Both the position numbers and the translations under genes were made by a program. A DNA stretch of 64,000 nucleotides, taken from contig JAWQFM010000008.1 in the NCBI GenBank assembly GCA_033442325.1, positions 1,389,728-1,453,727 of the forward strand, given 5' to 3'. The notes below the pieces were generated by a model that searched no databases, was not told the origin of the DNA, and saw nothing but the letters and a program-made list of their open reading frames with translations. Source of the DNA: Salpingoeca rosetta. Taxonomy: Eukaryota; Protista; Choanoflagellata. Below are positions 23,461 to 26,797 of the stretch, one piece after another (position 1 is the first letter of the stretch; the number at the start of each line of letters is the position of its first letter).

Positions 23461-23518
23461 GGCTCCAGTTCAGCAGCAGTCCAAGTGCCAAAGTTTGTTG
23501 GTGGAGAAGGTGATGTGA

Positions 23519-23953
23519 CAGGGGGCGACAGTAAAAATCGTAAAAAGCAACGGCTATTCGCGATTGAGTCCATGAAATTCTGCTCCTCGAGATCTCTTGA
23601 ATGGCGGGGTTTTCGTGCTTGGGGTTTGCTCGACTAGTGGTGTGTGTGGTTTGTGGGAACAACTGTGTACTGGGGGGTAAACAGCAGGCAAGAACTTGAC
23701 CGCAAGCATTGAGACAGCACACAAACGCCCTGTTGGACTCTACTGCTCATGTCCGCTGTCTCTCTCCGCTGCAGCTGCTCAAATTGCAGCCTCTCCACTA
23801 TCATCACCACGTTCGTCAACACCTTCTCCATCACAGTCGTCGTCTGAGTCCTCATCGCTAACGATCTCAGCTGTCTCATCACGATCAAACACTGCGGTCT
23901 CCCCAAGGATTGTTGACATCAACCCATCAATCAAGCTGTCCATGTTCCCTGGC

Positions 23954-23985
<32 letters not shown>

Positions 23986-24157
23986 TGGTTGTGGCTGTGG
24001 TTGTGGTTGTGGCTGTGGTTGTGGTTGTGGTTGTGGTTGTGGTTGTGGTTGTGGTTGTGGTTGTGGTAGCTTGTCAGGGCAGGTTCTGCGAGTGTGACCG
24101 GGCTGTCGGCACACCGAGCATAGCCGCTCCTTCTTCTTCTTCTTCTGCTGCTGCTGC

Positions 24158-24212
<55 letters not shown>

Positions 24213-25446
24213 GCTGCTGCTGCTGCTGCTGCCGTGCATCTGATTGAAAGGCGCACGCCCGCTTCCAATGCTCAGCAATGGCGCGATCTGTGCGGTCGAT
24301 GATTGCTTGAATGAGGGTTCGTCCTCCTCGCTTGTGGTGCCCACGGTCTTCCGACAGCTCAACGATCTCTGCTCGCAGTCGCTCGCCGACTTCCTTAAAC
24401 TTCGTTCCTTTGGAATACTGACGGGCAATGCGGTTCTTGATGTAGGCCCAAACAAGTTCGATGGGTTGCAAGTCGGAGTAGCGCGGTGGTGTAAACACAA
24501 CAGTGTGCCCCTGTTCCTCAGCCAGCGCAACAAGCTCAGGCTTCACGTGTGCCTTGAGCCAGTCCCGCGCCATCCTCCTCAGCGTATCGCAATGATGTAC
24601 GCGGGAAGCCAAAGGAACCCGAGCCATTTGTCGCTGATGAGAAGAGAGGCCATCTGGATCTGTGGATGTGGTAGAAAGGAAGCTGTGGTTGCCACTCTGG
24701 TCGCTAGCACTGTCTCCGTCGTCGTCCCCACCATCAGCCTGCGTGCTCGCTTGCGCTGTGACCTTGTTGGGATCAGGGGACAACAGAAAAGCGAGCAGTT
24801 GTGCTTTCTTCATCGTGTTGGGGTCTGGTGTCTTGGGTGGGTAGCCCTTGTGGTAAGCCGCGTTGTCCATGATGATCAGTGAGGGCTGCTTCAGGTTGGG
24901 GAGAAGCTGGTACTTCCACCACTTCTTGAAGTTGGTTTTGTTGAACACCTTGTGATAGTCGCCTACGTGAGGGTTGCTGATCTTGCCCTTCGAGGTCCGC
25001 TTGCCTTTTGGCGTGTCTGTCTTCGATGCTGCATCTGAAGAAGCAGCAGCTGTCTCGGTTGTGGTCTGCTTGGACTGGTCCCGCTTCTCCTTGCGTGCTC
25101 CAGCGGATGGATCGAAGACCCACTCTGTACCCGGGACAACACCCGCAAGATGCGCCCACCCATCTGATGCGTCTGCTTCGCCAGCTACCACACGAGGGTC
25201 ACTGTTCTGGATGGCGAGGCAAAAGCAGTAGCGCCTGCCGTCCTTAATCTTCTTTTGGCCAATGTTTGCGTGGTGGACGGGATGCATCAGAGAATGCGTC
25301 GTGAAGTTGTGGGTGCAGTTCACGTATGATTCGTCAAGATACACCTTGACAACAGAAGACACAAAGCAACAAGGCGTCGGATGCGTGCGCACATGAGTGA
25401 ATGCCTTTCAACGTGTGTGCGTGTGTGTGTGTATGTGCGTGCGTGC

Positions 25447-25478
<32 letters not shown>

Positions 25479-26540
25479 TCATGGTGTGGCGAACGAGAAC
25501 GCACGGCAGCGGGTCTTACCTCGCGCAGCTGTTGCTCTGGTGGAAGCTTCCGATTATCCAGGAGAACCTTGAGGTAGTTTGTCAGCCACTCGAGCACGTG
25601 GGTGCTTGGGCGTGCTGCTTCGTCTGAACGGCCAGTCTTTCCTCTGATGTACCCGGCGCGCACGAGGAAGCGTTGTGTCGCACGCTTGGCGCTGGCGAGA
25701 GCCTTCTCGTCGTCATCACCCGTGACGATATCCTTTACCACCTTCACAATCGCCCTCTTGCGGAGCATGTCGAGAACCTCTGTTGCAGTGACGATTGTGT
25801 GCTCGGTCCTTCGGTCCGTCACAAAGTCGCGCACAAGCCGCAGAGTCTCGTTGGTACAGGGGATGCGCGTGTGCTTCGTGTGCTGGCCTCGCTTGCTGCC
25901 TTGGCCATCCAGTATGTCGTAGGTTCCAGACTTCTTGCATCGGTTCCAAGCCGCGATGACCTCGTTCACAGTTGAGCGAGACACCCCAAGCAGGTCCGCC
26001 ACTTCTTGACCGGAATCCTCCTTCGGTTTACGGCCACCCTTTGCTTTGCGTTGTTCTCGGTCGCGTGCCCGATTGTAGCGAACACGTGTGTAACAGTAGA
26101 CGATCATCCATCTCTCACGGTCCAATAGCGCAGGCTGGCCTCGTTTCTTCTTGAGATTAGTCATATCGGTCAACATCTCGTCCATTGATACATGTCTTGG
26201 CGTGCCAATTCTGTCCTTGTAGTCTGGCATGGTCTTCGCACGCTTGCTGCGACGAACAGTGGTGACGGTCTCATCCTCATCCTCCTCATCCTCCTCTGGC
26301 TCATAATCACTGTCGGGCTGAGAGCGGCTCATGACTGGATTCAGTCGGCGATTGACGAAAATCTTTCGACACCCGACCTTGATTGTCTTCGTGTCGGATG
26401 TGTGTCGCAGATTCGATCTTGCGACCGGGCTCATCGGATGCCTCGTTTCGAGATCTCTATTTTGAGCACATTTTTGTCAGTTTTCGGTACTGCACCACCC
26501 CACAGGCTTCCTTTTCACTGGTTTGAAGTGTCGCCCCCTG
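23519..26540 (-). mobile_element. Complete DNA transposon (3,022 bp) with 12-bp perfect TIRs CAGGGGGCGACA and 8-bp TSD TGATGTGA
   Basis: Left end: TGATGTGA (23511-23518) then CAGGGGGCGACA (23519-23530). Right end: TGTCGCCCCCTG (26529-26540) then TGATGTGA (26541-26548). Encloses a DDE transposase. Confidence 0.92.
23779..26434 (-). CDS. IS630/Tc1/mariner-superfamily DDE transposase (long D-E spacer, Sailor/oomycete-like) with one intron and a C-terminal CCHC knuckle
   Basis: HTH QEVADLLGVSRSTVNEVI. Intron 25519-25345 joins LRE|VYLDESY (D1); IIMDNAAYH (D2); FTPPRYSDLQPIELVWAYIK (E); CSVCRQPGHTRRTC. Start at 26434 or 26332. Confidence 0.9.
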
Positions 26541-26797
26541 TGATGTGAGACTCAGGGGGAACACGATGGACAAGCCGAAGGGTGGGTGTGTCGGTTGCAG
26601 CAGCGGCGTTTGGCAAAACAATACACGACACCATGAAATGTATTTACACACGAAAAGCCATCGAAGATACAGCTCAATTTTCACCAACGACGATTTCTGA
26701 TAAATATCTTCAGTTATTTTTCGTTGGCGCCAATCCCGCTGACACACAACTCGTGCTGCCATCAGCCATCAGCTCACATCGGATCCAGCCATCAACC

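What the first reader, a model, noticed from the sequence alone, without database searches (positions are those of the whole stretch)
23511..26548. Intact transposon pairing an IS630/Tc1-mariner-type transposase with hAT-like ends and an 8-bp target-site duplication
Seen in sequence: perfect 12-bp TIRs CAGGGGGCGACA (23519-23530 and 26529-26540, with weak similarity further in), flanked on both sides by the exact direct repeat TGATGTGA. The enclosed transposase has clear ITm motifs: HTH, YLDES, IIMDNAAYH and PPxxSDLQPIELVW. Established knowledge: ITm-superfamily elements characteristically duplicate TA, while CAGGG termini with 8-bp TSDs are the hAT signature. No TA flanks either end and no hAT transposase is present. 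Inference: this may be an ITm-derived lineage with an altered cleavage stagger (possibly a distinct family), or a chimera mobilised in trans by a hAT enzyme. The intact reading frame and perfect TSD suggest a recent, potentially active insertion. S. rosetta TE families have been surveyed before, so the element may already have a name even if this mismatch is unexplained.
Basis: partly seen in the sequence, partly recalled or inferred. Interest (0 to 1): 0.85.

Follow-up and report, generated by a model that had tools for sequence, protein, structure and literature searches.

The report
Active Sailor-type transposon, probable 3-bp duplication
This is an intact, recently mobile cut-and-paste transposon of the Sailor (DD82E) branch of the Tc1/mariner group; its striking 8-bp flanking repeat is most likely the clade's usual 3-bp T-N-A duplication landing in a short TGATG-type repeat, not a hAT-like feature.

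Summary
A 3022-bp element (23519-26540) has perfect 12-bp inverted ends, CAGGGGGCGACA, flanked on both sides by TGATGTGA. It carries a two-exon, 826-aa HTH + DDE transposase gene on the minus strand.

The hAT-like interpretation is not supported. The protein belongs to the DD81-85E (Sailor-type) IS630/Tc1/mariner family, with one ~53-aa insert that makes it DD135E. CAG tips are also the classic Tc1 tip.

Across 13 paired elements of this clade, all 26 flanks are T-N-A. These are SrosTm in this genome, the window copy and metagenomic relatives. Eight pairs are identical 3-bp duplications, and only the window copy shows 8 bp.

Contigs of three independent runs show extra left junctions ending TGA or TAA. 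None ends TGACGTGA, which an 8-bp duplication would require for the second assembled copy.

The 8-bp match has a 0.07% chance at a random TGA, but 19% in the TG|TGA|nGTGA context that both known sites share.

My estimate is a 3-bp TGA duplication at ~75% and a true 8-bp duplication at ~20%.

One junction lies at a site that is empty in the reference, and copy number differs between runs (about 3-5 against 2 assembled). The family has therefore moved recently. It is not among the families of the 2019 S. rosetta TE survey.

The parts
23519..26540 (-). Whole element, 3022 bp, with the transposase gene on the minus strand
   Evidence: A second copy at G000:C32:668885-671390 is 100% identical from 24041 to 26540 and then runs into an assembly gap. 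Similarity between the copies ends exactly at 26540/26541.
23519..23530 (+). Left (gene-3') terminal inverted repeat CAGGGGGCGACA
   Evidence: Only three such termini are assembled in the genome. Contig junctions from three runs all break at 23518/23519.
26529..26540 (+). Right (gene-5') terminal inverted repeat TGTCGCCCCCTG
   Evidence: Copy 2 has the same end.
23511..23518 (.). Left flank TGATGTGA. The last three bases, TGA (23516-23518), are the probable true target-site duplication.
   Evidence: T-N-A flanks are found across the clade. Other left junctions end TGTGA and GGTAA.
26541..26548 (.). Right flank TGATGTGA. The first three bases, TGA (26541-26543), are the probable true target-site duplication.
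   Evidence: Copy 2's right flank is TGACGTGA.
25520..26434 (-). Exon 1 (residues 1-305): acidic N-terminus and DNA-binding region, with HTH_23 at 25940-26059
   Evidence: Exon 1 is held at 94-100% in the contigs of many probable RNA runs (the run kind is only guessed by the tool).
25345..25519 (-). Intron of 175 nt, GT..AG, holding a (GT)n microsatellite and in-frame stops
   Evidence: Splicing restores the clade-wide motif LREVYLDES without a gap.
23779..25344 (-). Exon 2 (residues 306-826 plus stop): DDE catalytic domain with D309 at 25333-25335, D465 at 24865-24867 and E601 at 24457-24459
   Evidence: The triad aligns with D, D, E in 67 of 69 homologues.
24604..24780 (-). Low-complexity insert (residues 494-552) between D2 and E that stretches DD82/83E to DD135E
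23953..24231 (-). C-terminal tail: polyQ (24145-24231), CCHC zinc knuckle CSVCRQPGHTRRTC (24079-24120) and a PQ/Q repeat (23953-24066)
   Evidence: The S. rosetta paralogues are named CCHC-type domain-containing proteins.

Best explanation
The element is an autonomous cut-and-paste DNA transposon of the Sailor-type (DD82E) branch of IS630/Tc1/mariner. It belongs to an S. rosetta-specific subclade whose transposases carry an intron before D1 and a C-terminal CCHC knuckle.

Proposed mechanism: the HTH region binds the CAG...GACA-type inverted ends. The DDE domain excises the element and joins its 3' ends to a T-N-A target with a 3-nt stagger, so that gap repair duplicates T-N-A (here TGA). This mechanism is inferred from the family; nothing was assayed.

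The window copy landed on the middle TGA of a short GT-rich repeat (reconstructed empty site ...GGTGATG-TGA-TGTGAGAC...). The five bases on either side then happen to extend the 3-bp duplication to an apparent 8 bp.

The family is or was very recently mobile. What is shown: the anatomy, the family signature, T-N-A flanks across the clade, and junction polymorphism between runs.
For: 1. Family. Pfam gives HTH_23 and DDE_3. The only profile hit in the PDB is the Sleeping Beauty catalytic domain. Among 103 homologues the D2-E spacing is 81-85, mode 83, and SrosTm is exactly DD82E. The published SrosTm protein is RepBase type TcMar-m44. The Sailor motifs VYLDE, IIMDNA and PIEL are present.

2. Duplication in the clade. 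SrosTm pairs are TGA/TGA x3, TCA/TCA x1 and TCA/TAA x1. L089 is TCA/TCA with 27/27-bp TIRs. L106 is TCA/TCA and L107/L108 are TTA/TTA. All 26 flanks are T-N-A, and the TCA and TTA pairs co-vary, so the triplet is duplicated target and not part of the TIR.

3. This family. Contigs of runs X5, X6 and X10 give extra left junctions...GTTGTGTGTGA|CAG and ...AAAGGTAA|CAG. The unitig 23514-23547 begins at 23514 in all three runs. No junction therefore has C at 23514, which TGACGTGA|CAG (required if copy 2's duplication were 8 bp) would have. The flank of the first junction is absent from the assembly, as expected if it lies in copy 2's gap. Pairing it with copy 2 gives TGA/TGA.

4. The coincidence is affordable. 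3 of 16 TGA sites in the context TG|TGA|nGTGA give an 8-bp match, and TGATGTGATGTGA occurs natively, for example in the array near 31 kb.

5. Mobility. The flank ...AAGAAAGGTA is unique at G000:C8:547976-548005, where the reference runs on uninterrupted. Interior depth is 3.1x, 4.2x and 5.1x that of the flank, against 2 assembled copies. The copies are 100% identical.
Against: - The only copy of this family with both junctions visible shows a perfect 8-bp repeat. For a random TGA site that has a chance of 7e-4.
- The extended target preference that makes it cheap is itself inferred from only two sites, and the polymorphic site (GG-TAA-CAT) does not fit it.
- The link between junction (ii) and copy 2 is by parsimony and is not shown directly.
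- No right junction other than the two assembled ones could be seen.
- Contigs can drop variants.
- Five of the 13 clade pairs differ at the middle base. Four of these are in metagenome assemblies, one of which is demonstrably chimeric (L105 against L106).
Confidence: 0.75

Rival explanations
1. This family truly makes an 8-bp target-site duplication. It would be a Sailor-type ITm transposase whose two active sites attack the target 8 bp apart, preferring targets of the form TGAYGTGA.
For: There is a perfect 8-bp direct repeat at the one fully visible copy, with a chance of 7e-4 for a random TGA site. Copy 2's right flank, TGACGTGA, has the same form, with T-N-A at both ends of the 8-mer.
Against: - Every relative with paired ends duplicates 3 bp.
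- In three runs no left junction carries CGTGA before CAG. Copy 2 would therefore have to be truncated or absent there, and junction (ii) would be a further copy with both flanks unassembled.
- The 8-mers implied by the other junctions (GTGTGTGA, AAAGGTAA) do not begin with T-N-A and do not fit TGAYGTGA.
- As far as I know, a change of stagger from 3 to 8 between proteins 35-50% identical has no precedent in this superfamily.
Confidence: 0.2
2. The element is a chimera or non-autonomous passenger with hAT-type ends, moved in trans by a hAT transposase. The ITm gene would be cargo.
For: CAGGG tips and an 8-bp repeat resemble Ac-like hAT elements (my own knowledge of hAT).
Against: - The same tip architecture (A|CAG..GACA..) flanks the same transposase family in SrosTm, family B and metagenomic relatives, so the ends and the enzyme travel together.
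- No Dimer_Tnp_hAT match was found in the genome (this is weak because there was no positive control).
- No hAT family appears in the published survey.
- The other junctions are T-N-A.
Confidence: 0.02
3. The 8-mer TGATGTGA (and the 10-mer TGTGATGTGA at 23349 and 27031) is a Tc1-style excision footprint: TGA + TG from the element's ...CTG end + TGA. The element would have re-inserted locally into a site built up by earlier insert-excise cycles. This variant also assumes a 3-bp duplication.
For: TGTGATGTGA occurs three times within 3.7 kb around the element. TGA-TG-TGA is the commonest TGA-NN-TGA form in the rest of the window, 7 against 1-4 for the others. Tc1 and Sleeping Beauty leave TSD + 2-3 nt + TSD footprints (my own knowledge).
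Against: The same strings arise in ordinary GT-rich microsatellites such as 30977-31142. No excision event was observed, and the counts are small.
Confidence: 0.1

Closest known systems
SrosTm, the Salpingoeca rosetta Tc1/mariner element (Southworth et al. 2019, PMC6875170; RepBase type TcMar-m44)
   Same: It is in the same genome and the same transposase family (IIVMDNAKYH and PPHYSDLQPIEIVW; DD82E). Its tips are ACAG...CTGT with a GACA motif, and its flanks are T-N-A.
   Different: SrosTm is 2071 bp with 28-bp TIRs, no intron and no CCHC tail, in 6 or more copies. Its catalytic exon is only about 25-50% identical to this one, and it falls outside this element's subclade in the tree. The paper reported no identifiable duplication; I find 3-bp T(G/C)A.
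Sailor (DD82E) superfamily of IS630-Tc1-mariner (Shi et al. 2021, PMC8533490)
   Same: Both have the long D2-E linker, the motifs around the triad (VYLDE, IIMDNA, PIEL), a wide size range, and a presence in stramenopiles, fungi, animals and one choanoflagellate.
   Different: Sailor is described with TATA duplications and TIRs starting GT or CC. Here the tips are CAG with T-N-A flanks, and this element is DD135E. Placement in a tree with named Sailor references was not tested.
Tc4 and Tc5 of Caenorhabditis elegans (Tc4 clade of TcMar)
   Same: This is the ITm lineage documented to duplicate T-N-A (target C|TNA|G).
   Different: Tc4 is a DDD enzyme with a CTNAG target and a distribution described only for nematodes and arthropods, plus tardigrades in that preprint. 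Here the enzyme is DDE with long spacing, and there is no C...G around the triplet.
hAT superfamily (Ac, hobo, Tam3)
   Same: CAGGG-like tips and an 8-bp flanking repeat at this one copy.
   Different: There is no hAT transposase or dimerisation domain in the element or detectable in the genome. The other junctions of the family do not support 8 bp.

Membership tests
IS630/Tc1/mariner (ITm) | DDE/D catalytic domain of the DDE_3 / Tc1-like RNase H type | tested here: met
   PF13358 DDE_3, E 6.8e-9, above its cut-off. D309, D465 and E601 align with D, D, E in 67 of 69 homologues. A family profile hits only the Sleeping Beauty transposase in the PDB, E 0.01.
IS630/Tc1/mariner (ITm) | N-terminal helix-turn-helix DNA-binding region | tested here: met
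   HTH_23, E 9.4e-6, just above its cut-off, at residues 126-165. A second HTH was not resolved.
IS630/Tc1/mariner (ITm) | TA target-site duplication | tested here: not met
   No TA abuts either end. The clade duplicates T-N-A, as Tc4 does within ITm.
Sailor / DD82E | [quoted passage not shown] | tested here: inconclusive
   The family mode is 83 and SrosTm is 82. This element has 135, because of one ~53-aa low-complexity insert in an otherwise collinear linker.
Sailor / DD82E | Motifs I/VVYLDET, VIIMDNA, HCELNPIEL | tested here: met
   EVYLDESY, LIIMDNAAYH and YSDLQPIELVW are present. The match is close but not exact at the third motif.
Sailor / DD82E | TATA duplication and TIRs beginning GT or CC | tested here: not met
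   The tips are CAG and the flanks are TGA. The same holds in all relatives examined.
Sailor / DD82E | Monophyly with named Sailor references in a DDE tree | not tested
   No named Sailor, Tc1, mariner, pogo or IS630 reference sequences could be brought in by reference. The tree holds only search hits.
hAT | hAT transposase (DDE with inserted domain plus C-terminal dimerisation domain) | tested here: not met
   The element's protein hits only HTH and DDE_3. PF05699 is not found in the genome (there was no positive control).
hAT | 8-bp target-site duplication at independent insertions | tested here: inconclusive
   One copy shows 8 bp. In three runs the contig graph lacks the left junction that an 8-bp duplication of copy 2 would need. 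No second fully paired copy was visible.
Tc4-like | DDD triad and CTNAG target | tested here: not met
   The third catalytic residue is E. The bases around the triplet are not C...G.

The most novel reading that the evidence does not exclude
This S. rosetta family really does duplicate 8 bp, on a TGAYGTGA-type target. That would make it an IS630/Tc1/mariner transposase whose strand-transfer stagger has shifted from 2-3 bp to 8 bp while keeping Tc1-like CAG tips.
Probability: 0.2. Interest if true: 0.8.

Novelty: new member of a known kind. Interest (0 to 1): 0.42.

Why it matters
S. rosetta is the main genetic model for the closest living relatives of animals. An intact, transcribed-looking DNA transposon that differs in copy number and position between sequenced cultures matters there for three reasons:
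- It is a source of spontaneous mutations in laboratory lines.
- It is a candidate endogenous tool for insertional mutagenesis.
- It appears to be missing from the published TE survey.

The work also corrects two literature statements. SrosTm does make a duplication (3-bp T-S-A). Sailor-type elements of this clade, in a choanoflagellate and in several environmental eukaryotes, use T-N-A rather than TATA. If the minority reading (a true 8-bp duplication) were right, it would be a rare case of a changed integration geometry inside one transposase family.

Tried and rejected
- Family B (10 or more copies, ends (C/T)AGTGCCCGACAC, five 5' flanks all ...TGA). I could not pair its ends.
- The C25 pair and the single-copy paralogues on C5, C13 and C8. 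No credible TIRs were found; the boundaries fall in CA microsatellites or the searches returned low-complexity noise.
Only the left junction could be laid, since one call is allowed, so no right junctions and no excision joints were seen.
- The three extra exact matches to the 12-bp TIR in the genome are at chance level and do not extend.
- The supplement of the 2019 survey gave no hit for the TIR or for YLDES. SrosTm itself contains YLDES, so that text search is unreliable. The statement that the family is uncatalogued rests on the paper's table of seven DNA transposon families, none of which matches in length, TIR or first bases.
- L088, L094, L101, L102 and L103/L104 gave no CAG-type TIRs.
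Full report
OBSERVATION

CAGGGGGCGACA lies at 23519-23530 and its exact reverse complement at 26529-26540. 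TGATGTGA lies directly outside both ends, at 23511-23518 and 26541-26548. No TA abuts either end.

The enclosed gene lies on the minus strand in two exons. Exon 1 is 26434-25520. A 175-nt GT..AG intron at 25519-25345 holds a (GT)n tract and in-frame stops. Exon 2 is 25344-23779. Joining the exons gives an 826-aa protein. The junction ...QQLRE|VYLDES... restores the clade-wide motif LREVYLDES without a gap. Pfam finds HTH_23 in exon 1 and DDE_3 in exon 2, both above their cut-offs. The tail carries a polyQ run, a CCHC knuckle (CSVCRQPGHTRRTC) and a PQ repeat.

WHAT THE TRANSPOSASE IS

A search with the catalytic exon found 103 relatives. They are four annotated S. rosetta proteins ("CCHC-type domain-containing protein"), diatom and oomycete proteins, and many 500-600-aa DDE_3 proteins on ~2-2.6-kb metagenome contigs.

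In an alignment of 69 of them, D309, D465 and E601 align with D, D, E in 67. The D2-E spacing is 81-85 in 60 of those 67, with mode 83. SrosTm, the published S. rosetta Tc1/mariner family (RepBase type TcMar-m44), is exactly DD82E. This is the signature of Sailor (DD82E), whose motifs VYLDE, IIMDNA and PIEL are also present. The window protein is DD135E because of a single ~53-aa low-complexity insert in an otherwise collinear linker.

A family profile hits only the Sleeping Beauty catalytic domain among solved structures (E 0.01). In a quick tree the window protein groups with PTSG_04010, PTSG_03158 and PTSG_01691 (SH-aLRT 98), apart from SrosTm. The 2019 survey lists seven DNA transposon families, and none matches this one in length, TIR or first bases.

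COPIES

The assembly holds two copies: the window copy, and G000:C32:668885-671390, which is 100% identical from 24041 to 26540. Copy 2 then runs into a 117-N gap inside the coding microsatellite, so its left end is unseen. Only three termini of the family are assembled. Copy 2's right flank is TGACGTGA followed by unrelated sequence. The element therefore ends at 26540, and the two right flanks are 7 of 8 alike.

WHAT RELATIVES DUPLICATE

All six SrosTm copies were retrieved with flanks. The pairs are TGA|CAG...CTG|TGA in three copies, TCA/TCA in one and TCA/TAA in one; the sixth copy shows only its right flank, TGA. Nothing beyond 3 bp matches. The TCA pair co-varies against the TGA pairs, so the triplet is duplicated target and not TIR. 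The 2019 paper reported that no duplication could be identified for SrosTm. Two first-stage notes on other windows (s1-431496, s1-432605) had seen the same 3-bp repeats.

Outside the genome the pattern continues:
- L089 has 27/27-bp TIRs, ACAGTGGTCGACAGCATCAG..., flanked TCA/TCA.
- L106 is TCA/TCA.
- L107/L108 are TTA/TTA.
- L097, L098, L099 and L105 have T-N-A on both sides but differ at the middle base.
- L105 shares its left flank with L106 but has another right flank. Metagenome assemblies can therefore be chimeric across copies.

In all, 13 paired elements give 26 of 26 T-N-A flanks and 8 identical pairs. Five family-B 5' flanks also end in TGA. T-N-A duplication has an ITm precedent in Tc4. 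Sailor was described with TATA.

THE 8-bp QUESTION

The 8-bp match cannot be dismissed as random. Only 4 of 6022 TGA sites in ~200 kb of this genome would give it. Two lines of evidence make a 3-bp duplication the better reading.

First, the contigs of three independent runs were laid on the left junction. They show other left junctions...GTCGTTGTG-TGTGA|CAG in all three runs...AAGAAAGGTA-A|CAG in X5, and at least one further TAA-type flank in X10. The short unitig 23514-23547 begins at 23514 in every run. Every path through GTGA|CAG therefore has T at 23514. A junction TGACGTGA|CAG, which an 8-bp duplication of copy 2 demands, would have split that unitig one base later. The flank of the first junction is absent from the assembly, as expected if it lies in copy 2's gap. 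Paired with copy 2 it gives TGA/TGA and no 8-bp repeat. In X5 the three junction depths (190.6 + 275.5 + 129.7) sum to the interior depth (594.7).

Second, both sites then read TG|TGA|YGTGA. In that context 3 of 16 genomic TGA sites give the 8-bp coincidence. The required empty site, TGATGTGATGTGA, occurs natively, for example in the GT-rich array at 30977-31142, which also holds TGACGTG.

Against this reading:
- The target preference is inferred from only two sites.
- The polymorphic site does not fit that preference.
- The pairing of junction (ii) with copy 2 rests on parsimony.
- No further right junctions could be seen.

I put the 3-bp reading at about 75% and a true 8-bp duplication at about 20%.

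THE hAT IDEA

CAG tips with an A/T just outside are common to all relatives, together with this transposase. They are also the classic Tc1/Tc3/Sleeping Beauty tip (my own knowledge). No hAT dimerisation domain was found in the genome (this is weak because the control genomes are prokaryotes). The published survey found no hAT family. A hAT-mobilised chimera has nothing in its favour.

MOBILITY

- The flank ...ACACCGTAGGCAACACCACCAAGAAAGGTA is unique at G000:C8:547976-548005. There the reference continues ACATAACAAC... without an element. That site is empty in the reference and filled in X5.
- Interior depth is 3.1x, 4.2x and 5.1x the flank depth in X5, X6 and X10, against two assembled copies. 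Contig depths are rough.
- The assembled copies are identical. The other runs' consensus differs from the window at one base, 23598 T>C.
- Exon 1 is held at 94-100% in the contigs of many probable RNA runs from four studies, but the run kind is only guessed by the tool and splicing could not be checked.

Together these point to a family that has moved recently and may still be active. No excision or integration event was observed directly.

MECHANISM (inferred)

The proposed mechanism is an ITm-type cut-and-paste reaction:
- The HTH region binds the short TIRs.
- The DDE centre excises the element.
- The 3' ends attack a T-N-A target 3 nt apart.
- Gap repair duplicates the triplet.

The roles of the D2-E insert, the polyQ/PQ tail and the CCHC knuckle are unknown.

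A speculative side idea is that TGA-TG-TGA strings near the element (23351, 27033) are Tc1-style excision footprints. This is not excluded, but it cannot be told apart from ordinary microsatellite sequence.

VERDICT

The element is a new, apparently uncatalogued member of a known kind, the Sailor-type ITm transposons. It is intact and recently mobile. The hAT-like reading is not supported, and the 8-bp repeat is probably a 3-bp duplication in a repetitive target. A real 8-bp duplication remains possible at about one in five and is cheap to settle with raw reads.

Noticed in passing
G000 loci L074-L084 (SrosTm copies on C1, C2, C6, C8, C11, C22): SrosTm has a 3-bp T(G/C)A target-site duplication: TGA/TGA x3, TCA/TCA x1 and TCA/TAA x1. 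The 2019 survey states that none could be identified.
   Followed up: yes
G000:C8:547976-548010 (L087:1501-1535): This site is empty in the reference (GGTAACATAAC) but carries an insertion of this element in run X5, whose left junction reads ...AAGAAAGGTAA|CAGGGGG. It is an insertion polymorphism between cultures or strains.
   Followed up: partly
L035-L057 and L064-L070 (G000 C1, C2, C5, C6, C7, C8, C10, C11, C12, C16): A multi-copy (10 or more) related family, 'B', has ends (C/T)AGTGCCCGACACACGAAATGG and 5' flanks that always end ...GTGA. It is longer than 4 kb, and most copies are broken by assembly gaps. Some copies have a different tip (ATCG|CGCCCGACAC). Its far end and its duplication were not resolved.
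   Followed up: partly
window 30977-31142: A degenerate GT-rich microsatellite is interspersed with TGATG and TGACG units. It contains both TGATGTGATGTGA and TGACGTG, the same strings that flank the two assembled copies.
   Followed up: partly
window 23349-23358 and 27031-27040: The exact 10-mer TGTGATGTGA lies 160 bp upstream and 490 bp downstream of the element. It could be a local motif, a microsatellite seed or an excision footprint (TGA-TG-TGA).
   Followed up: partly
window 23598: The contigs of runs X5, X6 and X10 read C where the window reads T. This is either a difference between copies or a reference error.
   Followed up: no
window 23126-23328: A long (TGT/TGC)n trinucleotide array lies just upstream of the element. 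It produces spurious poly-C/V/L/Q/T/N ORFs in all frames.
   Followed up: no
L097:2801-4851 (JGI metagenome contig): A piggyBac-type gene (DDE_Tnp_1_7) lies directly beside a Sailor-type element. In L097 and L098 the T-N-A flanks of the same element differ at the middle base (TTA/TAA and TTA/TCA), and both copies share ATTT before ACAG.
   Followed up: partly
L088:3699-6838 (ENA metagenome contig): A relative (P0027) sits inside nested inverted repeats: TGTGCATTTGTGCA..., 38/41, within AGAGGGAGTTCCATCGAA..., 23/26. These are unlike the CAG-type tips of the other relatives.
   Followed up: no
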